Positions 26,397 through 54,256 of a stretch of 64,000 bases of DNA are shown in pieces (positions within the stretch are counted from its first letter, which is position 1; each line of letters begins with the position of its first letter). The position numbers and the translations under genes are program-made. The notes beneath the pieces are model-generated. The model made no database searches. It worked only from the letters and a program-made list of their open reading frames with translations, and was not told the DNA's origin. Origin of the DNA: Ascidiella aspersa (Eukaryota); contig OZ004608.1 in the NCBI GenBank assembly GCA_963924565.1, positions 8,184,001 to 8,248,000 on the forward strand, given 5' to 3'.

Positions 26397-26646
26397 CAGT
26401 GATTCCCAAACTGTGTGCCTCGAAAGATGTTACGGAAAATAGAGTACAAATACATGCAAGCATTTCAGACTTAAATATACGTACTATTTATTACAAATTA
26501 ATAATATTGGGATTTCTACATACATACAGTTTGTCGTGTGTAAAGGGCGATTGTAAAATTACTCTTTTGTTGTTCTGTTAAAAGTGTGCTGCGAAATAGT
26601 TGATTTTTATAGTATGCCGCGAGCCAAAAAGGTTTAGGAACCACTG
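26397..26646. mobile_element. hAT-type MITE (duplicated copy of 19942-20167)
   Basis: Same TIRs and CTCTACGG TSD, with different internal indels; the insertion predates the segmental duplication. Confidence 0.85.
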
Positions 26647-32433: not shown

Positions 32434-34122
32434 GCACAGTGTTGTTTATGAATGCCAGTATTTTATTTTCTTAATTCAAAACTTGTTTATATAATCATAT
32501 TTGTAGTGCTGTAAAGGCGTTAATGACAACAATGACTTGACTTAACTGTTTTTACATGCCTTTCCTTTACTTGAGTATTTTTCCTATGTTTTAGGCAACT
32601 GACTAGATTTTTACTGTTTTTATCATTGTGTGAAATATCTCGGGTTGAGATTAAATGTTTTTGTTTATTTTTTTCAACAAAATCAGATATTTATTCAATT
32701 GTTGCACGTAAAACAATTTGCTTACTATACATTGCATTTTTTGTTCATATTAAGTTAAGATATTGATCATACACTGAACAGTTTACCAATTTTGATAGTT
32801 TTAATGTTTTATTTTTATACTCATGGTTTAGCTAATTTTATCATAACGGAGCGGTCAGAAATTCAACCATTTATATGGCAACCTATAGGGACGGGGTTAA
32901 ATAAATAATACAATTGAATTCGCCAAACCAGAACATACAATTCTCAGGTAGCGTACGTGTATTAACATACTAATGGCTTTTTATTCTAAATGTAAGAGAG
33001 CGTTCTTGTGAACAAAACTTAAGATGAAAGTAGGTATATTTTTAAAAAAGAACGTTGTAGAACACCACGACTTTAAATGGTCCAAATGTTGCGCCACTGT
33101 CGTCAGTTTAGCTGTGGTTTGCTTAAAGTATCTGACTTTTTAGCATTTCTAGGAACTGGATTTCTGTAACGCATAAACCTATAACGCCTACTGATTTTGG
33201 TTATTTTTTTTAAGTTTGCAGACACATTTTAAACACTTTTTTCTAAAAAACATTGAATGTATAACCAAACGGGTAATTGTGGTGTTAACTAAAACAAAGT
33301 TTAACCGTTTGAAATAGGGATGCTAATACATACATTCAATTCTTAACACTACAAATATGAAACGATGTGAAACTTTGCAAATATTAACAAAAACTTCAAT
33401 TGCAACACAACAAATATTTAAACATTTGACGTATAAGAATACGGTCAAAAACAATAAGAACTCCACAATAAAATGCCTTACGCATCAAGAAAAACTGCAC
33501 GTTGCTAGATATCAATTTGCGGCATCAATTATTCAAGAAAGCGTTTCTTTTATATCGCTCCATAATTAATGACGTACTCGCATCGATGTATTTTCATCTA
33601 GTATAAATATACCAGCATGTCCAATCCATGTCTAAAAGTTGACCGATACGACATGTCCTCTATTTTAGGCGGAAAAACACACTGTCTTATTTTTTTTTAT
33701 TATTTGGCTAAACTGCAACAAAATTTTATGAGAATTTATACACTAAATTTAGAAGAAAAACAATAAAATACAGAAAAACTTAAAATCGTTTGAAATAATA
33801 GTAGAGTCGCTGACAAAACAGGCAAACTAGGCAAAAGCAATTCATGGTTGGTAATCCTCATATTTAAATCTAAGGTCATTTAACAGCTTTAATTTCTTCA
33901 TAGAATGTACTTGTCTTTCTACGAGAAAATAAAATCTCCATAGCTAATATCTATATGTTTCACTTCCCTAGAAAAGAGCTTTATGATTAGCGCTTCTTAG
34001 CCACCGACAGCACGCATCACAGTAACCCAGCACTTTTAAGCAAAAAAATGACTCAATTACAGGCAACATTGCTTTCTACATCAAGTCTACCCTATTTCGT
34101 ATCCACAAACTAACGCAGTCAG

Positions 34123-37100
34123 TTAAGTAATCATTGTATAAATGTTGCCATCTCCAGGGTTCGTCCTCTCGAAATGCACGACGGGCGGGTGGTCCTCCTT
34201 CACCTGCTTCGGCTGCCGCTGAAGGCGACGCAGAGTCACCAGTGACGTCACCAGGAGGAGGAGGAGAAGCGCCAGGAGCAAGCATGACGTCACGCCCATT
34301 GGCGTAGCGTAGGCACCCAACAACGAGTAGAGCCGCTCTCGGCAGCCCTGGAGTGACAAAAAATGGCAACGTAACGAAGCGAAATTCATCAGACCAAAGA
34401 TGGCGTATGACGTGCTAGAGTTTAGCGGACATTTTTAAGCATAGAAGGGTTATTGTGAACTTTTATCACATTTATGTTATTTAAGGATGCAAGGATAGGC
34501 CAAATTAATAGTCTCAAGTTTTCCTTGTTTTTTATGGATTTTAAGGATGCATGGTTAGGCCAAATTAATAGGTTCAAGTTTTACTGGATATACACAACCA
34601 ACCGATTTCGAGTATTACAGCTAACGAAGGCAGAGTATAGAAACAAGATCTTAAATGTTCTAAGTATTATGTTTGCTTCCATGAATAAAAATCTGTGCTA
34701 ATCAGTACCAAATTTTGACTTCATAAATCCAGTGGCATGAAAAAGTTTTCTATAGCCGCAAATATCTTTCCCAATTTTTTGTTGTTTGTCTAACTCTAAG
34801 ATTCTTAAATATGCCGCGGAACTTTTTTGGCCTATTATTAACAAAAAGGCATATAGCAAAACGAACAAGATTTGAATATACACTACCCATTAGATAACTG
34901 ACAATGTAATGGTATTTATCAACTAACTTAGTATTAGGGGTGTTTGTTAAGTTATTATTGTATGGTTTGTGAAAATTGTGCCGCAAATTTGTTTTTTTGT
35001 TTGGTGTGCCGCAGGCTAAATTAGTTTGAGAGCCATTGGGTATGCCAGGTTTTTTCAGCCTATGGGTCACCGTTTTATTCGGTGACAAAGTTTGAGTCGC
35101 CGACTCCATTAGTTTACATGTGTACATTTATTAAGACTGGTTCTATACAAGGTATTTTCAAAATATGAGAAAACTGGGGGAAAAACGGAAAAACATGGCA
35201 TTTGTTAATTAATGAAAATTCGAATTTATGTAGGCTATTTGTTTTAATTGTGTCCACTGACAAAACGTTCAGCTTAGAGAAATGGGCCGTAAAAGCTTCA
35301 CTGTGACACTAACTCTTAATATTTGTATATCTGGGCTAAGCAACAATATTTAAAAGACAAATGCTCCGAGCAACACGTTTCAGCTGGCAAGGTTGTTAGC
35401 AGCATTCCGCAAAAAACACAAAAAGGGTTAAATGCTTACCGTGCTTCCATGTGTGACCGTGTCGTTCACCGTTGCGCTGTGAACGCACGAAAACGAGCTC
35501 ACGTATCCGCCAGACGCCGCCAGAGAGCAGCAGGACAGCGGCCAGGGTTGAACTTGCAAGGTAGTGTTGTGGAAGTAGCTAAACTGGTAGTCGCTGAAGA
35601 AGCCGCAGCACTCGTTCTGTGTAAGGCTTTACCGTTAGTTTGTTGTGTTTTAGCGAATTTGTCTTGAAAACTTGAGATACATTTGTGTGTGAAAGGCAAA
35701 TTGAAATGCAGTTTTATATACTTTATGTTGTTGGCAACATAGTAAACTAGAGGCGAAAATTGGCTAAACTGGACGTAAATTTGTACCGTGAACCGCAAAT
35801 GCTTTATTTCCTATAGCAGCGTTTAATGTCAAAAACTTCTTTGAAGAAATATTTGCCGACCTTTTTGGAAATTTAATGGGACCTTTTCAGTCCAAAACAC
35901 AGTAGGTCCATGTTAAGCTATGAGAACCACAGCTTTTTTTTGGGATTGAGTATTGGTTTGATATTTCTGTGAAACAAATATCCATACTGAACGGCCCCAA
36001 TAGTGTTAGGAAAATATAATTATCTACTCCATCTTAAATCGCGGATTGTTTAATTCGAGTAATAGATGTCCATCGTCCCAAAAACTTCGTTTCTTTCCTG
36101 TGGAAGCCAGACAGCTTAAATCTAAAACAGGCTATAATTTAATTCATTATTTCGGATTTAACCCTGTTCGTTCTATAAAAGTTTAGCGTAAAACCATAAA
36201 GCGAACTGTCGAAATTCAGTCCGCAGATTTACCGTTGTTTGAAACTCGTCCCACGCCAAGGTGATGGTGGCCGAAGTGGTGGAGGTGCACTTGTAGTGGT
36301 TCTTTATGGCAGCGATCGCATGCTCACCGTAGTGGACGTCGAACATGCCGAGAAACAACAAGCTGAGAACGGCCACCGCGATGCTCAGACAAATTGTGAT
36401 CACCAAGCCTGCAAGCATCTGAAACCAATTAAGAAATGCATTATTAATTAAAGTTACGAGAGCAAAAGTCCACGATATTATAAAGTTTGCAAACGAATCG
36501 CGACTGTGCATATTTAAGTGACTTTGTAACAACTGATCGCTGTCGACAAGTAAATCCGATCTGTTTGTTTATTTTTTGCTACCATGACTGGATTGATAAA
36601 CATTTTTTCGACCTTCACCAGTGCTCCGCAACCTTTTTACACTTGCGGCACACCAACAGAGCTAAATATATTAGGCGGCACACCTATACGAAATATATGA
36701 CGACACACCGGTTGCGGAGCACTGACCTACACGACAATTGTTATACTTTCTAAACGAAGCATACCAAAGAGTCAAAATACAATCCTACCACTTGCAAAAC
36801 GGCCTTGCGTTCTTGTTTCACGCCGAAGAGACTCCACAAAGCGGTGAAGAGTCCAACCACCCCGGCAGTTGTGCCACAAAAAGCGGCATTTTCCAGAACG
36901 TTCGAAGCAGAGCCGATCAAACTTTCTTGGGTTTCATAGTTGATCAGGGTCCAGATTGACACGACGAGCAACGCAAAGCTGCCAAGCTAAAAGCGCGAAG
37001 TTCACAATAAGAGATGTTCTATGATATTGTAATTGGAGCCGTTACCCGATAAGAGTAAAAGTATCGCTACTCCAAAACTGGACTTCCACATACCAATAAT

Positions 37101-38093: not shown

Positions 38094-39279
38094 TTTCCAC
38101 AAATCGTCTGTCCAGCAGCTCCCGCAGCACCTTTCAAGCTTTAATTCCAGTAGAATCTTACCCCGGCGGCGTCGACAATACACGACTATGGGATATGACA
38201 AAAGACTGGGGGGAATTTGAAATATAATACTCGATCAACACAATATAAACCTTCTCGCGTTGCACTGCGATGAAAAAACCTTTCACACTTGCTTGCGCCT
38301 TACATGTTTTTCCATGGGCGTTTCACACCTTTTGGAAAACCAATTGTTGGAAAACAGACAGCAGTGCGCGTGTTCGCTGATCACTCTTTTTTTAGGTTAC
38401 ACGTGTCTCTCTTCCAGTGTTGTAAACAAGTCATTTTGAAATTATCTAAGTGCCATTCAAGTCATTCTTAAAATACCTTAAGCCCAAGCCAAATCAATTT
38501 AAATGACAAAGTTGTATAAGTCCCAGTCAGGTCATAATTCGAGCAAGTCAGTTCAAAGTCAAGTACTTGTCATTTCGTAACTATTACACGTTAAACTATT
38601 AAAATTGGTAAACTCGTCCGATTATGAGCAATACAGTAATTAAAAAATAGGTCATCACAACACTAATCTTTGTGATGCATATGTTGTCATTTTTCAAAAA
38701 CTTTTTCGAGTATTTTAATCAGCAAATAAACCAGATTAGTTGTTCTTTTTTTTACAATTGAATACAATACGAGTAATGGTTAAACAAAATTGCGAGCGAT
38801 TTGTAAAACTCAGATTAAGCCCAAAGCATTGTACAAAATAAATGTATATTCTTGAGAATGGTGTTTCACGTGCTGGCCACATAAGGCGTTAAACGTAGCT
38901 TACATTAAAAATGCTTGCTTGTTGTGTAAAGCATATATAATCAGAAAACGAAATGCGAAAAACGCTATACGGCAGAAACATAAAACATTGGGTTTACGCA
39001 GTGGTGAAAGTGCAATAATTTTTGTTTACAGTAACAATGAAAAAAAAGTTTTGATGACGTCACAAAATTACATCATAACGAACGTCTAAACATGTAACAA
39101 TAGGAAACCTGAGGTTATCATTCGATGCAGTGCAGAAATATACAACTGAACTCTTAGTTTAAATATGTACAGTTAAGGAGATGGCAGGGTGGCCTGATGA
39201 AAAAAAAATTAAAAAAAAATCGCATGTTCAATTGGCGATCATCACAGATCTGTATTGAAAATTACCAAATCGTTTAGAA

Positions 39280-39638
39280 CAGTGCTTTTCAACCCGTGGG
39301 ATGGTACGCACTTGTGCGGATGAAAAAAATTGTAATGCGGATGACTAACGTCGTGCGGATGAATGTGCGGATGAAAATGGTGCATTATTATTTTTTATCA
39401 TATGGAATATAGTAATTAAATAAGCTGGTGCCCCCACTTGCGTTACAGGTACAGTAATATAGTCTCGTATAATAGTTCATTGCAGCTTAAGCTATCTATT
39501 TTATATCGGTCAACGCTTAGGCATACGGTTTTAATACACAAACGCTTTCATGTTGTTTTTTCAGAATTTAAACTAAAAGCTGCAAACTTACTGCGCTTGT
39601 TTCGTGCGCATGGAAATTTTAAAGGTTGAAAAGCACTG
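39280..39638. mobile_element. hAT-type MITE just downstream of the tetraspanin D stop codon
   Basis: Perfect 15-bp TIR CAGTGCTTTTCAACC / GGTTGAAAAGCACTG; perfect TSD GTTTAGAA; internal (G)TGCGGATGA repeats. Confidence 0.9.
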
Positions 39639-39716
39639 GTTTAGAAAATCGAATCAGGTTCCCAGTATAGTTTTTAATTGTTGGCTAGTTGATATACTTT
39701 TTCACCCTGATACACT

Positions 39717-42700
39717 TTATAACGTCAGCCACACCCGGTCTACGTGACATACAATAACAAAGCAAAGCACAAGAAGTAAGATGTGCAGGGCGGTCAGGAA
39801 AAGTGCGACCGAGCCCACTGCAACCACGTAATTCTTGACCATCGATCGAATTTGTCCACCGCAGCCCTGGCAATCAAAACAGATTTTGTTCCATGGCTTT
39901 ATATTATGCGTAATATTAAGTTAAAATTGTAAGTGTAGTAGTGCTAAAAAGTACAAGTAAACCAGTAAATAACCCTGATTATGTTGTGTACACAAAGTGT
40001 ATAACAAAAATGTACAAAAACGCGTTTCACTTTAAAGAATTGTAGCAGGGGTTCCGAAAAGCAAAAAGAAACAACTAATGCTTCATGATATCGTGTAAAA
40101 ATGAATATGGTACAACACGTGGTATATATAAATTCAGTCATTTATATATAACTAAATAAAAATTAGTGATTATTGCAGGCGAACATAATACACTTATACA
40201 TGTTACATAGGCCGCCTTTCCGAAAGCGCGAAGATTACTTGATCAATAATTTCGAAAGGCAACTGTGACGATTAAACTTAAACTTCAAACTGGCGAGGTT
40301 TCATAAACAAAAGCATATTGATTAATACCTAAAAGTCTTCCCTTCCTTTAATACGTGTAGGTTTACCTTCGATATGAAAGATCTGGTGCTGTTGGTATGT
40401 TGAGTGCAAGAATTCGAGCTTGCGACTACGTTAGATGGCGAAAGAGCACAACAAGAATCCGGCCACGGCTTGGAGCTTTTGCTTGAATATTTGCTTAAAG
40501 TGTAGTCGGAACCGTTGTTGTAGCCACAGCAGTGGCGCTGTTAACAATATAGGGTCATAAATTATGAACACCAATTTCATGCAAGGCTTTGTTTTTTTTT
40601 TAGATGTACCAACGTGGCTGGTTTAGTTTTAATGCATTACCGGTGGTTATTAAGCCAAAAAAGTCGGTACATATTGGCCGACAACTTCAAGGTCTTTGTA
40701 CAATGAAGACTGTAACGTTTTTAGGCTTATTTGTTTGAGGCCTTTTCTGTTGTTATTTTAAACGCCAGGTAAGCACCATCAGCAAAACGCAGCTGCATTT
40801 GCGTTGACCATAATCGATAAGGTTTTTCTGTATAATTGATTTTCAAGTCTGCGTAGTCGGTTAAAAACAACCGTCCAACTAGGACCAAAAAAGTAAATTT
40901 GAATCCGCCTCCAGTGTCCCCACTCCATTTAATTTGCCCATTCTGTCAATTCCCGAGTCCTATTTCGACTCTAAAGAATGTACTCCGCCCTCTTACTTAA
41001 CTCAAACAGGGTATAAAAACAGAAATTCACTCAAAGGGGGTGTCATATATCTCATTCATTCTAAATTCGTGGTTGGAAAATATTCCACCCTATGCTATTC
41101 CATCTTTAGAATTTACAGTTTGTGGTCTTATCGGTTTCGAATTAGGTTCTGCGCATGCGCACGTCGGACTCGGGGCTTAAGTATAGTCCAGCGTATAGTG
41201 TCAAGTTCGGCTCCAGCAAAATAAATTAACTGTTTAAAGTACCGATCCCCAAGTCCAAAATCCGACTCCGCAGCCCTGTTGCTTTCTACCCTGAAAGCAA
41301 TAATTTAGAGGTCATAGCGCGCAACCCTGGACTTTAAATTCTAACAATAAGATACGGCCCAACAATTACGGTCAGAAATGACCAAATAAAATTGCACCTT
41401 TCACGCCTGGCAGCCTTTAGAGGCCTATTGTTGGTGGTTTGGGATTCCTTAACGATTTGACTGGTGGCTTTGCATCGGTAAACAACGGCTCTGAAATGAG
41501 CTGTTTCTACACCCGAGCTTTCATAGATATCTTATTCGGCGCGCATTAAGATAAAATTTTAATGACAAGTTTGTGCTAGCTGTTGTCGTACATTTAATAA
41601 AGGTTTCGAGCCCTCGGTTACAAATTATCAATTACTTTGTCGACCTGCAATAGAGAAATGTATTTTAAAGTGTTGCTCATAAAATATGAGCTGTGGTAAA
41701 ACAATTTAAAAACCTTCTGCAGTATTGTAGTAATGCGCATTGCACATACTGCATATAGTGCTTTCTGTGCACATGTTTCGGTCAAACTTGACGGCATATA
41801 TGACTATAAATAAATCGCTAGATAATCTGGCCAAAAAAAAGCAGTCGTTGGTAATCCTGATAACTTTTTTCAGTCTTATCTTTGTGAATTTATTTCCAAA
41901 TCTTGTATAGTTTTTCAAGCTTTCAGGTTCCTATACGCTCAAAATCAACAGTAAACAAAGCCTACATGCACAGTAATAGGTTACCTCTTTTTGCATGGCG
42001 TCCCATGCTTTGGTAATGGTGGCAGCGTAGGGGTGCGAAGTGGCGTACTGGGACTTGACTGCCGACAGGGCTGCCACCTCCAAGCTGCGTTCGGATCTAA
42101 CGGCGAATGTGAAGACCATGGTGGCTGACGATGCGTAGACAGCTGCAAGTGTGAAGAGCCCGACCGAAAACTGTGAAAAAATTCAACTAAATTTACTTTT
42201 ATGTAGACAAAATCCAAAACCGGATAGTTTGTGAGTACAGATGTCGGATAACATATGGGTTTGAACCAGTGGTGAATGTAAGCCGAAAAATAATTACTGC
42301 CGGATTTTGCATTCCGGTAAAATATGAATTGCTTTTCCGCCATTTCAAAAAAATATTTCATTTTTTACAAGGCCATATCACAAAACTTCACATTGAACGC
42401 CTAGGCTAGGATTTTCAAAGTTGCAAGCTTTGTGAAGTCTGCGTAACTTAGCGACGTAATTTTCATCGTCTACTTTCATCTCAAATCTAAACCGATAACA
42501 AGTTGTATATCGATAATCGTTCAAAACCGTTGTTTGACGTTTGATCCGATCTTACATCAATTTGTGGATTTCGGTTCGTGATGCAACTCGGCTATTTCTA
42601 TATTAAAACAGACTATTGAAAAAAGGCATTTCGACAATTAAAGCCATCAAAGCTTCAGAGCGTGAAAGCAAAGTTTGACTTAATGGCCCGAAACTCTTTT

Positions 42701-45700
42701 ATTTGTATATAAATTTTGAAACACAACTTTAAATGGCGCTTGTCAAAAATTAAACAGCCAATGTTTTAGTGTCAGTTTTTTTTTGCATTATCTGGTGTGT
42801 CGGTTTTTATACTTTTTACAAATTTGCAGCTTCAAAAAAGCCTTGCAAATATTTTGGAAGGGACGATGTATACAGTCCCAAAGTGAAAAGCGGTTGGGTA
42901 ATTTTCAGGCTGGAAGAACTTAACCCTTATCATACCAAAATCGTAAAGGAGCGGGCTCTATAAATACCACGCCAGGTGCGACTGTACCTAATAGCAGTTA
43001 TATCCCGCGGAATCTCGCGCAAGTTAGAATGAAGCACCTGCGACGAGTAATGCCTTCCATTTTTCGTCGCAATTCGATAATAGAGGCTTTTGGGATGTTT
43101 GGCTTTTTGCAGGAGCGGGGGTTAAGTAATTTTCTTCCCGAAACGCATGACAATTTTCAGACATGACGTCACAGCGGGACTTTTAAAACGAATAACCTTA
43201 GGAACATGAAGGTTATCGTTTGATGTCGTGCACAAATATGCAACTGAAATATTTGTTTAAAAACTTTCAGAGTTGTTCAAAGAAAATAGCCTGGTAAAAA
43301 ATAACATTTTTATAAACTTTAAAATGTCAATAAAAAATTTGTTATTTATTTGTACATAAAAATAAAATTTTATGAACAAAATTATTTTTAACGGTTCGGC
43401 GTATACCTGCAAAAAATATTTGAGCGTTACGCCACTTCGGACAGTTTTCGCTTACCTTTACCACGGCTTTTTAGTCGGGCAATTCGGTTTCCGATATTTT
43501 GTGACGTAATGTCACATGTTATTACGTCACCAGTTTGACATGCATGACTTTCGTTGACAAATACATATCAACGGTCTTATCGTAGGAGTGGTTTTCAACA
43601 TACAGCGAACACGCTTAGGTTGTAATTATGCGACGATACAAAGGTATTTTGAAAAATCAAACCAACACAAATTTGCACTTTCCATATATTCGGAGGCCTA
43701 AAAAAAAAACTTCGTCAGGAGTTGTTATATTTATTGGCGTTATACAAAAACAAACAAACAAGAGATGAACACCTGGTAACAAAAGAAAAGAAGAAACCAG
43801 AGTAAGCGATTCTTCACTTATTTACAAAAGGGTAAGGCAATATTTTGGAGCCTGTTGACAACAGACATCAGTTATCTTGTGTTGATAAGTAACAAGCTTT
43901 CAGGTGCTTAATAAAAGAAGAATTAAGAAGCAAGAGAACTTCATTAATAAAAGTAGAACAATTGTACACAAACACCAAAGATAAAACGCGATTTTGAAGA
44001 AATAAAACATCAGATTTTCTTTATTTTGAAGGTTCGAGCGGGCGTTAGAAACAAATGAAAAAGTATAAAAAACATAGCAGCAAAAGGTAGTTCAAGTTGC
44101 ATTTGAAAAGGGAACATAAAACAGCATTATTTGCGGAACGTTAAAAACGCGCAACTTTTTTATACGCATTCCTCGGCGATTTTAAACGAAATAGTGTACA
44201 TTTATGAAGTGAATTAAAATTCGAGTTTAGTTAATGTCTTTCCTGCCATCTTCGTATTACCACCGCAATTTACCGAAATTCTTGGAGAAGTGTTTGCTTA
44301 ATATGTTTCGGCCATATAACCATATTAAACGGCGACCCAATTTTGGGGCTCGCCCCATGGGTTGAGAAACACTGTTTTTTAGACAAACGTCTGATACGGT
44401 GTTTACCCTCGTTTTTAACTCTATTTTTTTAAGCCAATTTAAAAAGAAAAGCCGTTTTGAGGCAAGTATGGCAACAAAGAAGCTAGAAAAATTAAGAGGG
44501 ATAAAAGCTTTAAAGTTTTTAACAGGGTTCTCAAACTGGGGGGCGCGACGCTCTAGGGGGGGCGTGAAGACTTTGTAAGGGGGCGTGAAGAACTCTTCGA
44601 GAAAAAATATATTTTCCATTTATTTAATATTGTTTTCCTTACACGACTATCTCTTCCATCGTATCCAATGAAACATATTATTCGCATAGGGGTTGCCGAG
44701 TTTCAACAAATTGTTACAAAAGGGGCGCGGTCCCAAAACTTCAAGAACCGCCTTATATAGCAGCTATAGCTTGTTGATAATGCGCAAGAGGCTCTCGGGG
44801 ATTTTAACGTCGCCGAGGCGCAGAATAAAGCCGCACACAAAGGCCATGGTCTTGGCGAGCGGGGGCGGAAAGGCGATGTTGAAAGCCCAGTAGCTGGACA
44901 CCAGGGTTGCCAGGGCAGCGTAGAAATCGCCCTCGACTGTCACCTCATTCCCGTCGACGCACACACACTTGCTGAGGTCGGCGTCGATTCGGATGCACGG
45001 GTAGGCCAGGTCCGGTTGCTATGGCGACATTTGGTTTTGTTATTGTTTTGTTAAAGGGTTGTCATACGTTTTCGTGTGAAAATATTTAAAGATATTCAAC
45101 TCTTCTAAGGAAACTTTTTAGGTTTTTTTTTAAGACCTGAAATTGGAAAAACTAGAAATGCTTTGAATGAAATTTAAAAACAGAATAGTAAACGTATTGA
45201 TGAACCTACTAGAGTTAAAAAAAATATTTTACAACGGCTTCTTCTAAACATATAACGTAAGCTGCAAATAAAATAAATTTAAAGAGTGTTCAAACTGTTG
45301 AAAAAACATAGAAGTCTTTTCAAACAAATAGCGATTATACTCCTTTTATATTTTAAGCTTTAATTTCATATTTATTTTTCGGTAAAACATTTTAAGTTTT
45401 TCACCAATGGCATTATTTTTTTATTTTTTTGAATATTCATTAACATCATGGAAAATTTGTTTATAATGGGTTACTGCGCTACTTAATACATCAGGTAATC
45501 ACTGGCCAAAAATATTTGTTCATCACTGCAACGAATATAGATACCTTTATATTAAGATGTTTAAAATAACTCTGCAAGGCAAATAATTGAATCAATAAAT
45601 TGTTCAAAACTACTGGTTGCACAAATGAACTTACCGCTTTGTACGCTGCAAAGTGCTTCACGTTTTCGCAAAAGATGAGAGGAATTTGGATTATCCAAGC

Positions 45701-48700
45701 CGTCAGCGTAGTGTCTCTTTCTGCGCATTCACGGACAAGATTTTAAATAAACAACCCGGCAAATGAACATTAATTAAACAAAAAAGGCACCATTCTTATT
45801 GAATGCACAGACAAGGTTTCAAATAAAGACAACTGTCAAAAAAACAATAATATATTTGATCAGGGTCGTGAGTTCAATCTCACCGCAGGCTAAATTTTTC
45901 GAGCATAGCCTTGCATGCACTTCAATATAATTAGACGAGAAGTTTTAAACCTGAAGGGAATTCTCATTTAGGTTGGGATTTTTTAGCTTTAACGGGGATT
46001 GAATTTGACCAAATAAAATACATTAGAGCTGTGAGTGAAATTTGGGTTCATATGCATATTTGATTCAAGTAATGAGGAGAGACCAATTTGAAATCTAAAC
46101 ATAGCAGGTCGTTTTCGTAAGCGAGAAAAAACTTTGACTGAAGCGTAGAGTTCCTTATTATTACGTCACAACTAACAATGCACTTTTTGAGCACTTCGTT
46201 ATTTACTTTGCCGCTGGTCTATTAACCAATCGACTCTTGTACATTAGTCAAGGGTCGTTACCTCGAACCTCAGGAGTCCAGTCTTGCCTTGTTAATCTTT
46301 AATCGTAATTAGGACGACTGATTTTCGGTTTGAAAGTACCCGGTATATAATAAAGTCAACATTTGTTTTTTTTATTTGCTGATTTATATTACCCACCAAT
46401 CAATTCAACGAACTCAGATGGTAGTTTGTTCGGGTTGAGGTGTAGTTTAAGTTGGGAAAGCTTGCTGAGTCGTAACTCGACAAGGACGTCTTTGCCGGTG
46501 AGTTGGCGCATTTCGTGAAGAAGCTGTAAACAAACGGGTAAGATAAGGAGGGTTATATAGGTTTGTGATCGGGCCCAGCAAAATACACAAAGTACGCTAC
46601 CTTTTTTATTACTTCGCTACACCCTGCTAACAAAAAATACGAAAAAAAACCTACAGGAAAAGAGTCAAAAAAATAAAAAAATAAATGTAAAACTACAATA
46701 GACACATCTGTGCCAAAAGTCAACACTTAAAATTTGGACGCGGTAATCGTCTGAAAGTTAAGTTTTTTTGAACGTGTAACGTTGGTGTTAATTTCGTCCG
46801 CGTGTTTTTGCTTTGTTGGACAATGTTTAGTTTACCCAATTCACCCTAAAAACACCAAGCTATGTCAACAATAAATGTCTTGCTTAAAATAACCAATATT
46901 GTTTTTATATATATGGCCAGGCCAACTGAAATGAAATAAATTCTGTTTTTCGAGCCTTGTGTGATTAATTAATATTAGTTGCATATTTGCACATCAGTCC
47001 AATCGAGAAGAATGTAGTTCCTAATATTACTAGTATTATGACGTCCCACTACATCACATAGCTGAAAAAATATGGCCCACAAGTAAACATCCTAGATCTG
47101 CCCCACATGTATGTCGCACCATTTTGTAGTGAAAAACAAAATGGAAAACGCACCCATTCGGAATTTTTCAGCGGCAGGTAAGTTTTCAAGACGTTGGCTA
47201 ATTGGTCTTTGTGCTGCAATTGCTTCCTTCTTTGCTCGAAGGTGCGGTTAAGAGCGTTCCTCACAACCTCCACTGAAGGGTTGATCTTCTGCATTTCTTC
47301 TTGAATAACACGGATGTGCTGACCGGTGACAAGGTCGTCCTGAAGGTCGGGGTACTGCAAGGCAGGGGTGGGGATCAGGGCATGGGCAAGATAGACAAGC
47401 AAAATATAGTGCCCATGTGAGCTTAAAATGACGTTTCTTTTTTTTGTGAACTGATTTAGAGCTGACTCACCAAAAATACACTGTAAGAGGTGTAGGTGCT
47501 TTTAAAGCAAAATCAGTATATTTGTGGGGTTTAGCGAATGTTTATTTTTAGAAGTTGTTTTACAGCTTGGGTCTTACAACATTTTTTTGAAGACCACTAA
47601 TATAGTGGTAAAGCAAAGGGTCAAAACAAGAAAAACATAATAATTTAGTAGGAAATGATAGAATTGCAATTTGTAGCCCTTTTTGGCAGGGGCATAACTC
47701 ACAGGCCATAAATATCCTACACCTTAATATGCATGAATCACTAAAAAAAGGCATGATTGGGGCATACTTATAAAATCAAAAATTATTAGTGGCACACTTC
47801 CTTACCTGACAATCAACCCTAATACACAGTAGGGCAATATGTAAAGTATTAATATTAATTAACATTACACAAAAAATCTTACCTCCGCTGCCAGTGAGTC
47901 AAAATGCCGTCTGGGCCGAAGAACAAGTGGAAGTGCTGTAATATCTTTCAGACGCTTTCTTTTTGCAGAATACTTTTTCTGCATCAAGAGTCGCGTTTCG
48001 TTTTTGGGGCACCGCCTTCGAAAATCCTTGTAGCGATTTCTGAGCATTAGAACCCACGAGTTCTGAAAGGCAATGAGGTAGTCTGGAATGTCTTTTCAGA
48101 AGATTTAAACTCCTGCATAACCTCCGACCAAAACTCAATTTGCTTTGCCTTTAAGTATCTCACTATATAAAATCTTCTAAAAATTCAGATGGCAACAAAA
48201 ATCAGAATTGTTATCCGTTTTACTCAATTTCTTCTTGTAGCATATTATTAAATTGCTTTAAAAAGTTTATTTTGTGTTGCCAATGGAAAATATTTAAATT
48301 GTTATCAACTACCCCCAACTATTATTACTACTTGGATTGGTGTTATGTCAGGTAATTAAACATCACCATTTCTAATCATTCCTGCCTTAGACAGAGTAAC
48401 TTATAACTGCTACTTAAAAAACAATATATATCATTTAACAGAAAAAAAACTTACATAATATGCACCTTTAGTTGCAATGCGGTCCCGAAGGACAGGAAAC
48501 TTTTCCACAAGAGTATGACCAACAATCCGGTACTGACATGGCTGGGGATACCTACAATACAGAAACAAATTAGACAATCCATCGCAAAACAAACTGCTAT
48601 AATATAATTATACAATGTAATCATTTAAGCCAAAAAAATTGACCAAAGAAATAGAATACAAATTGACATCACTAAAAAAAGTTATTTACATACTTACAAA

Positions 48701-51700
48701 GTGTACTTGGTCATTGCATTAAACAGAATGTTGACAATTTTGTTGCGGATTCGACTCAACACGTAGGGCCAGGTACCTTTGGCCACCATTTCAATATGAT
48801 CAGTTATAACTTGACCGAATGGAGGCAATTCGTAGGTGGCTGGCCAACCTTTAGTCTTAAAAGTCCATTCGTCAGACGATGAATCAGTATTCGATTGACT
48901 GGATGTTGCTTGCTTTCGCTTCTGTTCCCTTTTGACAATTTCAAGTGTGCTGTTAACTTTCTTCCTTGACTTACCAATTGAGTTTTTGCTGCATTTAAGC
49001 ATCTTAATGCTTCCACCACTAATCTCAACTGGTTCATCAGTCTTCTGGCTCTTTTCAAGAGAAGATAGATCGTCGCTTGGCAAGAGGGGCTCACTCTTAT
49101 CGATGCTTTCAAGCAGCTCGACAGTTCCGTCGCTGACTTCCACCAGTTGCATCGATTTTGCATCCCCGTCCATGTCAACAATGCTTGACGCATCGCTTTC
49201 GGTCACATCACTTTGGCCAAAGCTTTCAAGGTGGTTTGAGAAGTTTTTAAAACTATTGTGTTGTGTAGAGGCACCTTGGTCTAAGTGCAATAAAGTGGAA
49301 TTATGATGTGCTGGTGGAGCGTCCAACTGCAGTTGGCAGCTATTGTGGTGTGCTGAAGGAGAATTGTGTTGAGTTGAGGGACCAGGCAAAGAGGTATTGT
49401 TTGTTTGTAGCAAGCTGCCATCTAGGTGCAATAAAGAGGGGTTAAAGGGTTCGTCAAATACAGAAAGCAGCCTTAGCTTTGATAAGGTAGGTGGAAAGCT
49501 ATCTCCTTTCATCACATCAATCCATTCTTCAAAGTTTTTGTTATACAGCTGGAGTCTTATTCGTGAGAAATTTTCAATGTTAAGCTTCATGATTGCCTTT
49601 GACATCAGTTCGCCAAAGTTCCGCGCTTCTATTACAATATTAAGGTTTTCATATTTCACAAGGTACTCTCCCAAATCGTAAGATTCAGGATTAATCGTTC
49701 GGTACCTGCGCGGTTTCTTGTCTAGGCCACCATGATATCGGTACAAATGTGTCCTGAAAGCCTTGTATGTTGAACAGCACTTATAGCATTCTGGAATTTT
49801 GCAAGTCAGATCTTTGAGGTCAGTGTCTCTATGATCATTGCGAAGATGGTAGAGCAGATTGCTGTGTGATGTGAACATTGCCTCGCAAAGGGGCGATGGA
49901 CATTGCATGTCTATCGTGGTTGTGAAAACAATCCAACCACAGATTTATAAACAGTTCAGCTGCAAAAATCATAAAATACTACTATTCTAATTTTAGAGTT
50001 TTTGATAGTAGTTTCAAGTATGATTGATATAGTAATAGTATGATTGATATATAGTATGATTGATAGAGCCAAAAGCATAACTTACCAAAAATTGTATGGT
50101 AATTTGTTCCTATTCGTTAACTCACTTGTTTTTTATGTTTATTTTAAATGTTGAATGACCACAAATCAACAGGCCGGATTTCCATTATTCTTGCTTGTCA
50201 GTTTGGTGCAGAGTATAAATGGTATTTTATTCTTTTTAGACTCGCCTAATCAACTTCTCTTGCACTTCTACCACCAACTATGCAGCTAAATAATTTCTGA
50301 TATTGTCAGTTGCTGCGTATGCATGTCTTTCAAAACACGTGGGATTAAACACATATTTAATAACAAACCTAGAAGTACAAAAATACTTCTGCAAAACCAA
50401 CAAGTGCGATTACGCCGTATCTACATTATTGAACAACTTATTCCTTTTGCGCCAAACACTAAGCAACTCGCCAGTACGAAAACTCCTAAACAGTCTATCT
50501 AATTGACGGTTTCAATGGGCGCCGTTGGTCTGCAGTGCGCACATAAAAAGGTGCCGACAATCCTGTTTTTCGCCGCACTGCTTCTGTGCGCTGTTGTTTT
50601 GCTGAGAAAGCAAATATCCTAAAATTCAGGCAGCCTAAAAAACTGGAGCCTGTCGCCCTTTTAATGCCCTACTGAAGTCCTAAACTCTTGCTAGCGGTAA
50701 CTACGTAGCGTCGGACAAAAGGCAAACAAAGGGTGGGAAAAACGATACGAAGGGTAGGTCGAGTGGGAAAAAGGCAGCGGCGGATTTTAGGAGTGGCGTT
50801 TTTGAGGGTCGACGTATTGTAGGAAAACTGAAGGTTGGTTTTTCGCGATTGTTGAACGACTGCTGGACGACAGTTTGAAGTTGTTTTGAATTTGACGCGA
50901 CCAGGCGTTACCGATTTGCTATGGCGACGCTAATTTCGACGCGCGTTACAAAATTCGACATTTCTATACAAAACACCCAAACTTTACGTTTTACAATGCT
51001 GCAAAGTGCAGGCATAGGCAACATTATAATTTGCAAAACACCCCCATAAAGGGGAAATAATTTACCTGAATTAGCGGCGAAGTCGTCCGTTTTGCAATGT
51101 CAATATATCCAATAAAAACAAATACCAATCATAACACCTCAAAGCTTGTTGTAAGATATTATGTTTTAGTTCGCGAGACTAAAGCTGGCCAAATACTGCA
51201 TTTAAATATTCCATTCGGCGACTATACGTTTTTGCATACGGTACCAGTAGTGCTATATGGCAAAAAAAACTTTTCTGTTTATATTCCTTCACCCGTCAGG
51301 TCATCAAGATATAAATTGAGTTATCTGGAAATACAACCAGCATTCTAGCCTACTTATATTTTAGCTTAGGCTTAGTTGTTTTTCAAAAATGAATTTTTTA
51401 TAAGTGATACTTGAATTGCTTTTTCGTCACCGTACAATTAGATGATGTCTATTCTATCTACTCGACCTTTTTGGTTTGTAAATTCATTATCAAAATTCCA
51501 ATAACCCATTATTTTTTTAATCATTTTTTCTGTTAATCGTAAACAAAAACTCACCAAGGCGATGAGCGCTTTGTTGTCCTTTAGGGTGCCGGCCAGGCCC
51601 CACAGGCTAACCACTATTGTAATGGCGCCACCCCCGATGAGACAGTAGGTGGAATCCTCAAACAAGTCGAACCGCGTCAGAAACAGCTGGCCAACGCGCG

Positions 51701-53220
51701 ACTTAAAGGCCGAGTTGGCCCAGGAACCAATCCCGAGGGCCACAGCGCCGCATATCTGAATGTATAAGATAGATTACACTACGGCAGAAACAATATTAGG
51801 ATACGACAGATTGCATGGCTATTCGAAACATAAAAGGCCCCCAATTTTCTGACACGATTTTTTTGGGGCCTATTTGTCCACACCAAAGCTTATGGTGTTT
51901 ATGCCGTCATGCCATTGTTGCAGTGTTTAAGAGATTTTTCACAAGTGATTACAGCTCCCGTTGGTTGCACAAAATAGCTCGACACCTTTCATTTCAAGCT
52001 ATCAGTTACCGGTAGTCTTCCATTTATGTGTGAACTCGATAGTTTGCAAGAAATATAGTTGGCATATACAGACTGTCAAAATTTAACATACCGGTACTGC
52101 AAATACTACTCAAAAAGCGAGATAGGCCTAACCAGGCAAAAGGAGCAAAATGTAGACTGATAAATGAGCGGCGGGGGTAAACAAATTTCAAGTTGTGGCA
52201 AATTGTGTTTGGCTTGCTCAATGCCAAAGCAAACCACCAAATGTATACCGACCAATTAACGGCCCACTTGTAATGTAGTGACTTGTTGATATGTCTCCAG
52301 TTAAGCAGAACAAGTTTGGATGAAGGGATCAGCAAAACAACGCAACCTCTTAGGAGCCAGTTGGCACTTATTCTATAATGACAAGTAATTCAGCGTAACG
52401 CTGTATGAATGGCTGAAATAAATACATCTATAATCGTTGTTGAACACCAGCAGCACGATTGGATATAATAACGTGAGAGCGTGGAATCTTGCGCTATACA
52501 AAAAACACACAAAGAAAGCACCACGTCAAATCAATCTTTGGCTATGGAATTGGTGTCCTAAGATATATCTTGGTAAGATATTGACTATGCATCAGATTAA
52601 ATAAACAACTAACCGTCCATAAGCTTTAACACCAATATTTTATCAATATCATGCACAATTGCACAATTTGCACATCGATAGTCAGGGTGATTAAAACTAT
52701 GTTTTATCACAAAAATATAAACGACAATCTCAATGGTACAGCTCTTAAAACTAATAAGATCTTCCAGAATGCATTACAAAATTACAAAAAAACTTAGCCT
52801 ACTTCAAGCTCTAACTGTAGATTTTATCTAGAATAATGACAGAATCAATATAACAAAGAAAGAATATGTAGTAACAGAAGTCGCAATTTTATTAGGGCCT
52901 ACACATTTAATTTATCTAATAGCTCGTGAAACACCTATATCATACCATTAGTGGTTCGTATGCAGCTTGCAAACTACTAATAACCATCGATTCTTGGAAT
53001 AGAAGTTGTACATACCCTATTGTTTTACAGGGCAGTGAAAATCGGTTTTTGGTGCAAATGGCACACGTTACAAACAAAAAGTTAAATTTAACTCTATAAA
53101 ATGAATAAATTTTATTATGTTCATTATTTCAAAATCGCCATCCGCACGAAAACTTACCATGCAGGTTACAATAGCCAAAAGCAAACTCCACTTTATCTTG
53201 CGGTAGGTCACCGTCTCCAT
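39717..53220 (-). CDS. Tetraspanin D, divergent paralogue, ~256 aa, with a 9.4-kb intron 2
   Basis: Exons 53220-53158 (METVTYRKIKWSLLLAIVTCM), 51755-51555 (ICGAVALGIGSW...LKDNKALIAL), 42170-41985 (FSVGLF...KAWDAMQKE), 40537-40367 (RHCCGYNNG...PWPDSCC...SCT), 39866-39717 (GCGGQI...WLTL*). No other candidate exon 1/2 was seen between 42171 and 51554. Confidence 0.87.
44523..44750. mobile_element. Degenerate Charlie-like MITE next to the nested gene's stop codon
   Basis: CAGGGTTCTCAAACTGGGGGGCGCG...GGGGCGCGG..CAAGAACCGC; the 3' end is decayed. Confidence 0.5.
44764..49908 (-). CDS. Nested gene: two N-terminal C2H2 zinc fingers plus SAMD3-like C-terminal region, ~718 aa, possibly transposon-derived
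   Basis: Exons 49908-48698, 48551-48455, 48062-47883, 47354-47154, 46523-46397, 45720-45635, 45018-44764 join with GT-AG sites and compatible phases (2,0,0,0,1,0) into 719 codons including the stop. Fingers: CPSPLC..HLRNDH and CKIPEC..HLYRYH. Motifs YPQPCQYRIVGHTLVEKFPVLRD..SWVLMLRNRYKDFRR and YWAFNIAFPPPLAKTMAFV resemble SAMD3-like proteins as I recall them (not searched). Confidence 0.8.
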
Positions 53221-54256
53221 GTTATCTCCAGCCACTCAAAAGACAACTCTCGACCGGTCAAAAGACTCCCAACATTCGGCGTCCGAGCAAACGTGAACGG
53301 TCTGCGGAATTCTCCCTAGTGACCAATCCCGTGAAGGCCTTAACATCGCCCTGTGCCTTAATCCAAGGCCGTTAACGCTTCACGGGGCCCACCCCCCACA
53401 TCGTGCGTAATTGGGGGGGACAATACGGCGGCGCCTTTTCAGCACGAGGACACAGCCTGGAGTAATTTTCCAAGCTCCGCTTGTTCCGCGATTGTCCCTA
53501 AGCCAATCAGATCCGCGGTTCGCTTTTTTGCCGGTCGAATACATGTTTTATAGTGGCGGTGTTGATTTTCAGCGATTTTTAGACGCGGTGCGGCAACGGG
53601 TGGTGCCGATGAATACATTAAAACACAATGTAGCCACATGCTGAGATACTTGAGCTTACAAAAGCCATTAGCGGCTGTTTAAAAATGGAGCGGAAACGGG
53701 CGCCCCTTGGTTATGCAATTAGATACGGCTAAACTCTTGGAAAAATTGTTAAAGCAATACTCAGCCACCGTTAAATATGCATCCTTTGCGTTGTAGCCAT
53801 CCGAGACCCAACGACACCCACATGATTAAATTGCGTGTAACCAACTTCTCGCATTTATGCGCTGCCGTGCTATATATTCTGATTTAGTTTTATAATATCA
53901 GCCGCGCGTTAGACAACCAAACAGTAGCACGTCTAGGTAAGGTATCTAAACTGCTATTGCCAAAAGCCGCAAGGAATGGTTAGCAAATTATCAAAGCTTT
54001 CAAAGCCTATAGTTCGTTATAATTTACAAATTCCCTTGGTTCTGGCATGCTACAGGCTAATGCAGCGGGTTGTCTCAGTTCAAGTGCAAAACTGAACTAA
54101 ACGAACTTGCGTAAGGGTTAGGGGTGTGACCTCTACTTTCCGGGCTCCACTTTTGTACAGGTCTAAGTTCGCTCTTATATAACCTTTATCTTGAATCAAT
54201 AGGTCTACTTGAGGTGTGGAAACTGTTCGGCATTTTATCTATACTATAGCCATATC

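What the first reader, a model, noticed from the sequence alone, without database searches (positions are those of the whole stretch)
42171..51554. Intact 7-exon zinc-finger/SAMD3-like gene nested on the same strand inside tetraspanin D intron 2
Seen: tetraspanin D exon 2 (51755-51555) and exon 3 (42170-41985) bracket a complete spliced ORF of ~718 aa in the same orientation. It has its own acceptor (TTTTTGCAG at ~49960) 51 nt before its ATG and a candidate AATAAA at ~44620. Splicing D exon 2 onto that acceptor gives an immediate stop (CTG AAC TGT TTA TAA). Known: most nested genes are antisense, and a same-strand nested gene forces the host transcript to skip all its exons and read through its poly(A) site. 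Inference: the locus may be a binary switch (tetraspanin D versus nuclear zinc-finger protein) set by splicing/polyadenylation choice, by a separate internal promoter (GC-richer 50500-50950), or by SL trans-splicing if this is a tunicate.
Basis: partly seen in the sequence, partly recalled or inferred. Interest (0 to 1): 0.8.

Follow-up and report, generated by a model that had tools for sequence, protein, structure and literature searches.

The report
Transposon-derived gene inside a tetraspanin intron
An intact, expressed seven-exon gene does sit on the same strand inside an intron of a tetraspanin gene, but it is a single-copy descendant of a jumping gene's zinc-finger head and helper gene, and nothing yet shows that it acts as a switch with its host.

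Summary
Seven GT..AG exons on the minus strand (49908-44764) read in frame as 718 codons. They lie in the 9,384-base intron 2 of a complete five-exon, 256-codon tetraspanin on the same strand. In one RNA run, 18 reads fell on nested exons 1-5, all in one orientation, and three carried the exon 1>2 junction. None fell on host exon 2.

The gene is not shown to be SAMD3-like: no SAM domain and no named relative was found. Its only relatives are in this genome. Residues 3-62 match the zinc-finger head of a transposase. The rest matches that transposon's second gene, with introns at the same positions and phases wherever I checked. That transposon is about 11.7 kb, with CACTG ends, 2-base target duplications and three 99%-identical copies. 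The nested gene itself is single-copy, lacks the transposase core and has no terminal repeats.

Best reading: an old transposon-derived host gene with its own CpG-rich promoter. The switch idea and the 51555>42170 junction remain untested.

The scan noted this same stretch before (s1-791271), not other DNA.

The parts
53158..53220 (-). Host tetraspanin D, coding exon 1 (21 codons, ATG at 53220, donor GTAAGT, phase 0)
   Evidence: Read. The peptide is hydrophobic from residue 11 and, with the start of exon 2, would make TM1. It has no paralogue match at E<1, so this exon is the least certain part of the host model.
51555..51755 (-). Host tetraspanin D exon 2 (67 codons, phase 0, donor GTGAGT)
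   Evidence: Frame 0 is open. It matches Pfam Tetraspanin PF00335 profile positions 14-77 of 225 at E 3.2e-5, below the family cut-off because it is a fragment. It has paralogue matches at 30889-30785, 24556-24452 and 36902-36789. RNA reads in X3: 0.
42171..51554 (-). Host intron 2, 9,384 nt, holding the nested gene
   Evidence: Paralogue C has an intron at the same position and phase that is 371 nt long, 36788-36418. In the genome the intron is unique apart from short dispersed repeats.
50400..50999 (-). GC- and CpG-rich block, candidate promoter of the nested gene
   Evidence: GC is 46-48% against 28-37% around it. At 50700-50999 there are 27 CpG, observed/expected 1.83. The gene body downstream (46800-50400) has observed/expected 0.24-0.92. 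About one sense-oriented RNA read lies at roughly 50505-50654. The promoter role is inferred, not shown.
49909..49968 (-). Acceptor TTTTTGCAG (49968-49960) and 51-nt 5' UTR (49959-49909) with an in-frame TAA
   Evidence: Use of this acceptor is not shown: there were no RNA reads at 49561-50360.
48698..49908 (-). Nested gene exon 1 (403 codons + 2 nt). Two C2H2 fingers at residues 3-59, a small folded block at about 80-135, a roughly 165-residue low-complexity insert, and a conserved end at 350-403
   Evidence: Residues 3-62 are 38-40% identical to the head of the transposase ORF1, E 1.6e-9. Residues 82-134 and 325-403 match exon 1 of the transposon's ORF2. RNA depth is 1.1-2.1 over 48761-49560 and 0 over 49561-49960.
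48455..48551 (-). Nested exon 2 (97 nt)
   Evidence: 50-56% identical to ORF2 exon 2 of three transposon lineages, with the same borders and phases. Three RNA reads join it to exon 1.
47883..48062 (-). Nested exon 3 (180 nt)
   Evidence: RNA depth falls in its bins.
47154..47354 (-). Nested exon 4 (201 nt)
   Evidence: Two RNA reads cover 47160-47226.
46397..46523 (-). Nested exon 5 (127 nt, donor GTGGGT)
   Evidence: RNA depth is 0.32 in its bin.
45635..45720 (-). Nested exon 6 (86 nt)
   Evidence: It lay outside the stretch laid with reads.
44764..45018 (-). Nested exon 7 (84 codons + TAG), the best conserved part
   Evidence: There are 11 other loci in the genome at E<=0.01, 34-53% identical. 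It lay outside the stretch laid with reads.
44619..44624 (-). AATAAA, candidate poly(A) signal 140 nt after the stop
   Evidence: Read. Its use was not tested.
41985..42170 (-). Host tetraspanin D exon 3 (62 codons, phase 0)
   Evidence: It matches exon 3 of paralogue C at E 2.6e-4. Its 62 residues fit the 64 profile positions (78-141) left between the Pfam matches of exons 2 and 4. It has no Pfam hit of its own.
40367..40537 (-). Host exon 4 (57 codons, CCG and PDSCC motifs)
   Evidence: Pfam Tetraspanin positions 142-189, E 0.005. Paralogue matches at E 4e-11 to 2e-7.
39717..39866 (-). Host exon 5 (49 codons + TAA; GC motif, TM4)
   Evidence: It matches the last exons of paralogues A, B and C from their GC onward, E 2e-4 to 1e-3. 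The best 19-residue hydropathy is 2.98.
46574..46794 (.). About 220-bp dispersed repeat inside nested intron 4
   Evidence: In one search, 37 of the 39 non-self matches scored (of 847 first-look candidates) fall here, at 71-81% identity.

Best explanation
The nested unit is a single-copy host gene that descends from a DNA transposon of the CACTA/Mirage/Chapaev/Transib/Plavaka group.

What the gene is:
- It keeps the two-finger DNA-binding head of the transposase, joined directly to the element's second, intron-containing gene.
- The roughly 700-residue catalytic core and the terminal repeats are gone.
- It lies in intron 2 of an otherwise complete tetraspanin gene, on the same strand.

How it most likely works:
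- It is most likely transcribed from its own CpG-rich promoter about 0.5-1 kb upstream of its first acceptor.
- Its six inherited introns are spliced out and the RNA is polyadenylated about 140 nt after the stop.
- The host, when active, must read through it and splice 51555 to 42170.

Shown: the exon structure, the kinship with the transposon genes, single-copy status, loss of transposase and ends, expression with the right strand, and one junction.

Inferred: its own promoter, use of the 49959 acceptor, host read-through, and a nuclear DNA-binding role.
For: Structure and expression:
- The frame-consistent seven-exon model has canonical sites.
- RNA falls on exons 1-5 only, in one orientation, and three reads carry junction 1>2.

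Kinship with the transposon:
- The head matches transposase ORF1 at E 1.6e-9.
- Exons 1-7 match ORF2 in the same order. In every comparison I checked, the intron position and phase were the same.
- ORF1 followed by ORF2 on one strand recurs in three diverged lineages.
- Both genes lie between perfect 22-bp CACTG... terminal repeats with 2-bp target duplications, in copies 99% identical on three chromosomes.
- ORF1 has 79 relatives at E<=1e-5, among them proteins of Ciona, Hydra, a pipefish and a sponge. Some carry Pfam Tnp2 (PF02992) or Plavaka (PF18759).
- The passages I read in PMC12730594 give CA..TG termini, 2-5 bp duplications and C(2)C and H(3-4)H motifs for this clade. ORF1 of L013 contains CRHC and HYMLH.

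The nested gene as a host gene:
- Its exons are single-copy at DNA level.
- Its closest relative is 53% identical in the best exon.
- No terminal repeat flanks it.
- In a second haplotype (X2), 10 coding positions differ. That makes 5 synonymous codons against 4 amino-acid-changing ones. Shown differences are 10 in about 1,468 coding bases against 30 in about 2,332 non-coding bases.

Own promoter:
- A CpG-rich block lies upstream of a CpG-poor gene body, while the rest of the host intron is not CpG-poor.

Host completeness:
- Five phase-0 exons give 256 codons with the CCG, PDSCC and GC motifs.
- Exons 2-5 each match paralogues in order.
Against: - No orthologue in another species could be looked for, so conservation by selection rests on ORF integrity and a small polymorphism sample. 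19 differences were not shown by the tool.
- No RNA read covers 49561-49960, the zinc-finger part and the acceptor. The expressed RNA could therefore start inside exon 1 or carry another 5' end.
- Only one of six junctions is directly supported.
- The promoter is inferred from composition and about one read.
- Host exon 2 had no RNA, and the 51555>42170 junction is unseen. Host read-through is therefore an inference from the intactness of the five exons.
- Host exon 1 has no paralogue match.
Confidence: 0.65

Rival explanations
1. Shared-transcript switch. The nested mRNA is made from the host tetraspanin pre-mRNA. Either a spliced leader is added at 49959, giving an operon-like use of an intron, or host exon 2 is cis-spliced to 49959. 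Each primary transcript would then yield either the tetraspanin or the zinc-finger protein.
For: - Same strand.
- A strong acceptor sits in an AU-rich setting, GC 28.5% at 49900-50199.
- Splicing exon 2 to 49959 stops the tetraspanin frame after 4 codons.
- Earlier notes of this scan call the genome an ascidian with a spliced leader (untested here).
- Passages of PMC11155486 say about half of Ciona genes are SL trans-spliced and that acceptor surroundings are AU-rich.
Against: - There is no read evidence for any of these joints.
- Nested exons had 18 reads while host exon 2 had none. This is weak evidence: about 2 reads were expected.
- A CpG-rich block lies directly upstream, and CpG depletion is confined to the nested body rather than the whole intron. 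Both fit a separate transcription unit.
- The host exon 2 donor GTGAGT is strong. The same paper links efficient trans-splicing to weak upstream donors.
Confidence: 0.13
2. Undomesticated relic. The unit is simply an internally deleted, non-autonomous copy of a transposon family that is otherwise lost or unsampled. It is still open by chance or youth, is expressed as transposon genes are, and has no host function.
For: - All its relatives are transposon genes.
- One lineage (C2/C6 pair, 99.6-99.8% identical) carries ORF2 without ORF1 within 10 kb, so ORF2-only copies exist.
- No orthologue evidence is available.
Against: - It is single-copy.
- There are no terminal repeats, and no CACTG/CAGTG pair with more than 8 of 24 complementary bases.
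- The flanks are unique.
- It is no more than 53% identical to any other copy.
- All 718 codons and all 12 splice sites are nevertheless intact.
- Shown haplotype differences lean towards synonymous changes.
Confidence: 0.12
3. Broken host. The insertion split tetraspanin D, which is now dead. Exons 1-2 and 3-5 are no longer joined, so there is no nesting in a functional sense.
For: - No RNA on exon 2 in the one run sampled.
- The intron is 25 times longer than in paralogue C.
- Seven competing acceptors and a poly(A) signal lie in the way.
Against: - All five exons are open, all in phase 0, and have canonical sites.
- All family cysteine motifs are present.
- Exons 2-5 still match the paralogues, although the nested gene looks old.
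Confidence: 0.1

Closest known systems
CACTA / Mirage / Chapaev / Transib / Plavaka ('CMCT') DNA transposons
   Same: The source family in this genome has CACTG...CAGTG 22-bp terminal repeats and 2-bp target duplications. Its transposase has weak Pfam Plavaka and Tnp2 kin and contains C-x2-C and H-x3-H strings (clade features from passages of PMC12730594). The nested gene shares that transposase's zinc-finger head and the element's second gene.
   Different: The nested locus has no terminal repeats, no transposase core and only one copy, so it is a derivative and not a member. I did not map the catalytic DDE residues of ORF1 or place it in a tree, so the sub-lineage (Mirage-like by its 2-bp duplication, which I recall rather than tested) is open.
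Maize En/Spm with its two products TnpD (transposase) and TnpA (DNA-binding helper) (recalled, not read here)
   Same: A CACTA-type element that encodes a transposase plus a second, intron-rich gene on the same strand.
   Different: No sequence similarity to TnpA was tested. In the ascidian element ORF2 has its own ATG. The acceptors just upstream would give stops if joined to the finger exon. The finger-ORF2 fusion is therefore a feature of the nested gene and not an evident splice form of the element.
Transposase-derived host genes that keep the DNA-binding head and lose catalysis (for example P-element KP-type repressors, ZBED and THAP genes; recalled)
   Same: Single copy, no ends, DNA-binding fingers kept and catalytic core lost.
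   Different: Here the head is fused to the element's second gene, whose fold and function are unknown. The AlphaFold2 model of exon 1 has mean pLDDT 43.9 and the best fold match is Z 4.9. No orthologues are known.
Same-strand nested genes, and SL-resolved operons of Ciona
   Same: A complete gene inside an intron of another gene on the same strand, in a genome said to trans-splice.
   Different: Ciona operons, as defined in PMC11155486 (passage), are consecutive genes with no intergenic distance. They are not a gene inside an intron, and no SL read was seen here.
SAMD3
   Same: Nothing that I could show.
   Different: No SAM domain, and no SAMD3-named or SAM-bearing relative in any search. 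A paper search for SAMD3 together with transposon gave 6 papers. Judged from their titles and abstract openings in the search listing, none is about such a link. Length limits of one tool mean that full-length kin of exons 2-7 were never candidates.

Membership tests
Tetraspanin (host gene D) | Pfam PF00335 match | tested here: inconclusive
   Exon 2 matches profile positions 14-77 (24.1 bits, E 3.2e-5) and exon 4 matches 142-189 (16.9 bits, E 0.005). Each is below the 32.1-bit whole-protein cut-off because the exons were searched apart. Exons 1, 3 and 5 have no hit.
Tetraspanin (host gene D) | Four hydrophobic segments, and CCG, PxSCC and a later GC in the large loop | tested here: met
   CCG and PDSCC are in exon 4, and GC is at the start of exon 5. 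Hydrophobic peaks occur in exons 2, 3 and 5, plus the exon 1/2 border. Exons 2-5 match paralogues A-C in order.
C2H2 zinc finger (nested gene) | C-x2-4-C-x12-H-x3-5-H spacing and a Pfam match | tested here: met
   Two fingers, at residues 3-26 and 36-59, are spaced C-x4-C-x12-H-x4-H. FOXP-CC PF16159 scores 29.6 bits against a cut-off of 28.9. zf-C2H2 has E 0.0021, below its cut-off.
SAMD3 | N-terminal SAM domain | tested here: not met
   No SAM family appears among the Pfam hits of any of the 7 exons at E<=1.
SAMD3 | Similarity of the remainder to SAMD3 proteins | tested here: inconclusive
   Exon 1 against 1.84 billion representatives gave 6 hits at E<=1e-3, all unnamed fragments. The exon 7 profile and the exon 1 profile gave none. 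The Atlas gave only unnamed clusters. Exons 2-7 could only be compared with proteins of 46-147 residues.
CMCT-clade DNA transposon (as a mobile copy) | Terminal inverted repeats with CA..TG ends and a target duplication | tested here: not met
   The 22-bp repeat has 0 matches in the window at up to 3 mismatches. The best CACT[AG]/[CT]AGTG pair around the gene shares 8 of 24 bases. The longest flanking inverted repeat is 16 nt, about chance level by my own estimate.
CMCT-clade DNA transposon (as a mobile copy) | Transposase core | tested here: not met
   Exon 1 runs from the finger head (residues 3-62) straight into the ORF2 homology from residue 82. There is no ORF1 core match in the window locus.
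Domesticated transposon gene | Single copy, intact ORF and expression | tested here: met
   Expression was seen for exons 1 (3' two thirds) to 5 only.
Domesticated transposon gene | Orthologues at the same place in other species, under purifying selection | not testable with these tools
   No eukaryotic genome collection was at hand. Within the species, 5 synonymous against 4 changing codons were shown.
SL trans-spliced gene or operon | Spliced leader on the mRNA at the acceptor | not tested
   There were no reads at 49561-50360 in the one read-laying run.

The most novel reading that the evidence does not exclude
In a spliced-leader organism, a same-strand gene inside an intron can be fed by two routes: its own promoter and the host's pre-mRNA. 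Host transcripts that reach 49959 would then be either trans-spliced, which releases a zinc-finger mRNA and kills that tetraspanin transcript, or skipped. That would make this a natural 'intronic operon', in which splice choice sets the ratio of a membrane protein to a transposon-derived nuclear protein. A second bold reading is that the protein uses its transposase-type fingers to bind and restrain the still-active CACTG elements.
Probability: 0.1. Interest if true: 0.7.

Novelty: new member of a known kind. Interest (0 to 1): 0.35.

Why it matters
The finding turns an odd-looking 'gene within a gene' into a datable event. A two-gene DNA transposon landed in, or next to, a tetraspanin intron. 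It then lost its catalytic core and its ends, and left a spliced, expressed fusion of a DNA-binding head and the element's helper gene.

The same genome still holds 99%-identical full-length elements. It therefore offers both the ancestor-like state and the derived gene side by side, which is useful for asking what the unknown second gene of these animal transposons does.

The arrangement is also a clean test case for how a trans-splicing chordate keeps a host gene working across an internal same-strand gene. At present that is only a question, not a result.

Tried and rejected
Searches and checks that led nowhere:
- Pfam on the seven nested exons one by one found only the finger.
- phmmer of exon 1 against 1.84 billion representatives gave 6 weak, unnamed hits. 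The query did not even find itself, so this species' proteins are not in that library.
- A profile of exon 7 (3 rows) and a profile of exon 1 (6 rows) gave nothing. The length window of that tool excludes full-length kin of the short exons.
- The ESM Atlas on exon 7, with all clusters and with named clusters only, gave only 'hypothetical protein' clusters, mostly Chordata.
- AlphaFold2 on exon 1 with a 6-row alignment gave mean pLDDT 43.9. Only residues about 80-135 (two strands, helix, two strands) and 360-401 (two helices) scored above 60. The fold search gave a best Z of 4.9 on the helical hairpin, which is uninformative.
- Looking for transposon ends around the nested gene found none.
- I asked whether the element itself could make the finger-ORF2 fusion by splicing. 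A GTAAGA donor follows the fingers in ORF1, but the two acceptors before ORF2 would give stops. Rejected for that element.
- Rfam and tRNA scans of 39000-54000 found nothing.
- A paper search for SAMD3 with transposon gave 6 papers, none on such a link judging from their titles and abstract openings in the listing. A search for nested gene, same strand, trans-splicing and Ciona gave 11 papers. None describes an SL-fed intronic gene, judged from the listing only; I read passages of PMC11155486 alone.
- I did not consult supplements. Those of PMC11155486 and PMC12730594 may hold the leader sequence and transposon tables.

Limits on what was searched:
- I searched the spliced 718-residue model only exon by exon. 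The joined protein was never built as a string, searched or folded.
- One search used a reference for host exon 5 that was one base off, so in the wrong frame. repeat it correctly.
This report is the same text with that field filled.

Full report
What is there.

On the minus strand of window 42171-51554 lie seven exons: 49908-48698, 48551-48455, 48062-47883, 47354-47154, 46523-46397, 45720-45635 and 45018-44764. Every one is bounded by AG and GT. The reading frame runs through all of them for 2157 nt, which is 718 codons and a TAG. A competing donor four bases after exon 5 breaks the frame.

TTTTTGCAG ends at 49960, 51 nt before the ATG. A TAA lies in that 51 nt, in frame both with the ATG and with host exon 2. 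AATAAA lies at 44624-44619. A block of 46-48% GC lies at 50400-50900.

The host.

Tetraspanin D is a complete gene model of five coding exons, all in phase 0:
- 53220-53158 (21 codons)
- 51755-51555 (67 codons)
- 42170-41985 (62 codons)
- 40537-40367 (57 codons, with CCG and PDSCC)
- 39866-39720 (49 codons starting with GC, then a strongly hydrophobic segment and TAA)

This gives 256 codons.

Searched apart, exon 2 matches positions 14-77 of the Pfam tetraspanin profile and exon 4 matches positions 142-189. The 62 residues of exon 3 fit the 64 positions between them. Exons 1, 3 and 5 have no Pfam hit of their own. However, exons 2, 3, 4 and 5 each match the corresponding exons of the paralogues further down the window, in the same order. 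Exon 1 has no such match and is the weakest part of the model.

Paralogue C has its intron 2 at the same position and phase, and there it is 371 nt long, against 9,384 nt in D. Neither half of D could make a tetraspanin alone. I therefore read D as one gene that spans the nested one, but no read shows the 51555>42170 junction.

Expression.

One RNA run of the same species label (X3, stranded, paired) was available. About 6 in 100 of the run was read, and 18 reads were laid.

- All 18 have the first mate on the + strand. In most stranded libraries that means a minus-strand RNA.
- Depth falls in the bins that hold exons 5, 4, 3 and 2 and the 3' two thirds of exon 1.
- Depth is zero in the intron bins 45761-46360, 47361-47760 and 48161-48360. 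About 34 nt lie in intron 4 beside a repeat.
- Eight of the 18 reads were only partly laid, as spliced reads are.
- Three reads end at 48551 with ten loose letters that are the reverse complement of the end of exon 1, which is junction 48698>48551.
- No joint reached the tool's threshold of three reads, so five of the six junctions are not directly shown. Exons 6 and 7 were outside the stretch.
- Host exon 2 had no read. At this depth about two were expected for equal expression, so this says little.
- About one read lies at roughly 50505-50654, in the sense orientation.
- No read lies on 49561-49960, the part that encodes the fingers. The second DNA run X2 has a hole there too. I could not follow this up (note 5).

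What the gene is.

Pfam sees only the zinc fingers. There are two, spaced C-x4-C-x12-H-x4-H. No SAM domain is present. Every search gave no named relative:
- exon 1 against 1.84 billion representative proteins (6 weak, unnamed fragments)
- a profile of exon 7
- a profile of exon 1
- the ESM Atlas

The label 'SAMD3-like' is therefore unsupported. For exons 2-7 the tools could only see proteins of 46-147 residues, so it is not strictly excluded.

The informative relatives are in the same genome. Residues 3-62 are 38-40% identical to the head of long intronless ORFs of 790-829 residues. Those ORFs have 79 relatives at E<=1e-5 among 6,583 candidates, with named ones from Ciona intestinalis (three), Hydra, a pipefish, a sponge, a psyllid and a nematode. 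A few carry Pfam Tnp2 (PF02992), Plavaka (PF18759) or DUF4218 (PF13960). One ORF of this genome scores 23.8 bits on Plavaka, below the cut-off.

Directly downstream of each such ORF1, on the same strand, lies a second gene. Its exons match nested exon 1 (residues 82-134 and 325-403) and nested exons 2-7 in order. Wherever I checked, the intron position and phase were the same as in the nested gene:
- exon 1 ends in phase 2
- exon 2 ends after ..Y(Y/F)
- exon 3 starts just before the conserved W
- exon 4 ends after ..W
- exon 5 starts at (L/I)L.EM and ends in phase 1

The best-kept lineage has three copies, on contigs C4, C3 and C7, that are 99% identical. They differ by a private 2.7-kb insertion and a 760-bp deletion. 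The element is about 11.7 kb long. It has perfect 22-bp terminal inverted repeats that begin with CACTG, and 2-bp target duplications (CA and TA). Both genes lie between the repeats.

The passages I read in PMC12730594 describe the clade of EnSpm/CACTA, Mirage, Chapaev, Transib and Plavaka as sharing CA..TG termini, 2-5 bp duplications and C(2)C and H(3-4)H motifs. ORF1 of L013 contains CRHC and HYMLH. I did not map its catalytic residues.

Two further lineages also come as near-identical pairs on different contigs: 99.7% for C7/C8 and 99.6-99.8% for C2/C6. The C2/C6 pair has ORF2 without ORF1 within the 10 kb fetched.

Relic or host gene.

- The nested gene is single-copy at DNA level. With the whole intron as query, 37 of the 39 non-self matches scored (of 847 first-look candidates) fall on a roughly 220-bp repeat in nested intron 4, and the other two fall on two other short repeats. 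The upstream 1.6 kb and downstream 2.6 kb are likewise unique, apart from 40-190-bp repeats.
- No terminal repeat is left.
- Its closest relative is 53% identical in the best exon.
- The transposase core is absent.
- A roughly 165-residue low-complexity insert sets exon 1 apart.
- All 718 codons and all 12 splice sites are nevertheless intact, and the gene is transcribed and spliced.
- Against a second haplotype (X2), the 40 differences shown by the tool (19 more were not shown) include 10 in about 1,468 coding bases and 30 in about 2,332 non-coding bases. The coding ones make 5 synonymous and 4 amino-acid-changing codons.

I read this as an old, domesticated derivative. The proof, orthologues in other species, was out of reach.

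How it is expressed.

The 300 bases 50700-50999 hold 27 CpG, observed/expected 1.83, the highest value between 39600 and 54000. The nested gene body 46800-50400 is CpG-poor (0.24-0.92). The rest of the host intron, 42300-44700, is not (1.1-1.9).

In animals with gene-body methylation this pattern marks a transcription unit of its own. That is an inference from general knowledge, not a test. The acceptor at 49959 lies in AU-rich sequence (28.5% GC) 0.5-1 kb below that block. Two strong donors, GTGAGT near 50125 and GTAAGT near 50087, lie in between.

Earlier notes of this scan call the genome an ascidian with a spliced leader. I did not test that. Passages of PMC11155486 give about 50% trans-spliced genes in Ciona, outrons of median 458 bp, AU-rich acceptor surroundings, and more trans-splicing where the upstream donor is weak.

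The acceptor could therefore take a leader, an upstream non-coding exon, or host exon 2. The data do not say which. The 'binary switch' remains a hypothesis. The composition pattern, and the nested-only reads, lean mildly towards an independent unit.

Verdict.

The thing is a new member of a known kind, a transposon-derived gene nested in an intron. It has the uncommon feature that a transposase's DNA-binding head is fused to the element's second gene. The function of that second gene is unknown.

The joined 718-residue model was not searched or folded; all protein searches were made exon by exon.

Noticed in passing
L013/L018/L023 = G000:C4:25197758-25212190; G000:C3:31072542-31083501; G000:C7 from about 675663: Three copies, 99% identical, of an element of about 11.7 kb with two genes. 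It has perfect 22-bp CACTG... terminal repeats and 2-bp target duplications (CA, TA). One copy carries a private 2.7-kb insertion and one a 760-bp deletion that removes the end of ORF1 and exon 1 of ORF2. The element looks recently active.
   Followed up: partly
L012 551-2607 (G000:C7:23808551-23810607): Two ORFs of 297 and 294 residues lie just upstream of another transposon copy. The second one reads like the N-terminal part of a Helitron-type protein. That is my impression from the sequence, and it was not searched.
   Followed up: no
window 49561-51360: DNA run X2, a haplotype 1-5% diverged, has no contig here, and RNA run X3 has no read on 49561-49960, while X1 covers it all. X3 carries X2-like alleles at 47950, 48533 and 48874/48876. 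This may be a strongly diverged or rearranged allele over the zinc-finger part and the promoter.
   Followed up: no
window 51421-51494: Contigs of X1 and X2 break here with loose ends of 12-255 letters. The spot holds a 40-55-bp repeat found at more than 40 places in the genome. It is probably a polymorphic small insertion just inside host intron 2.
   Followed up: no
window 46574-46794, 45999-46207, 43122-43311: Short dispersed repeats (150-220 bp, 70-83% identical to many copies on all large contigs) lie inside nested introns 4 and 5 and in the downstream part of the host intron. None matched tRNA or Rfam models.
   Followed up: partly
window 20887-37000: Three further tetraspanin genes (A, B, C) lie on the same strand with the same exon layout. 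A and B exons are near-duplicates of each other.
   Followed up: no
P0001, P0005 (Logan contigs): Two 171-173-residue ORFs from other public runs are near-identical to exon 1 of ORF2 of two of the transposon lineages. The elements therefore occur in other sequenced samples of this or a close species.
   Followed up: no
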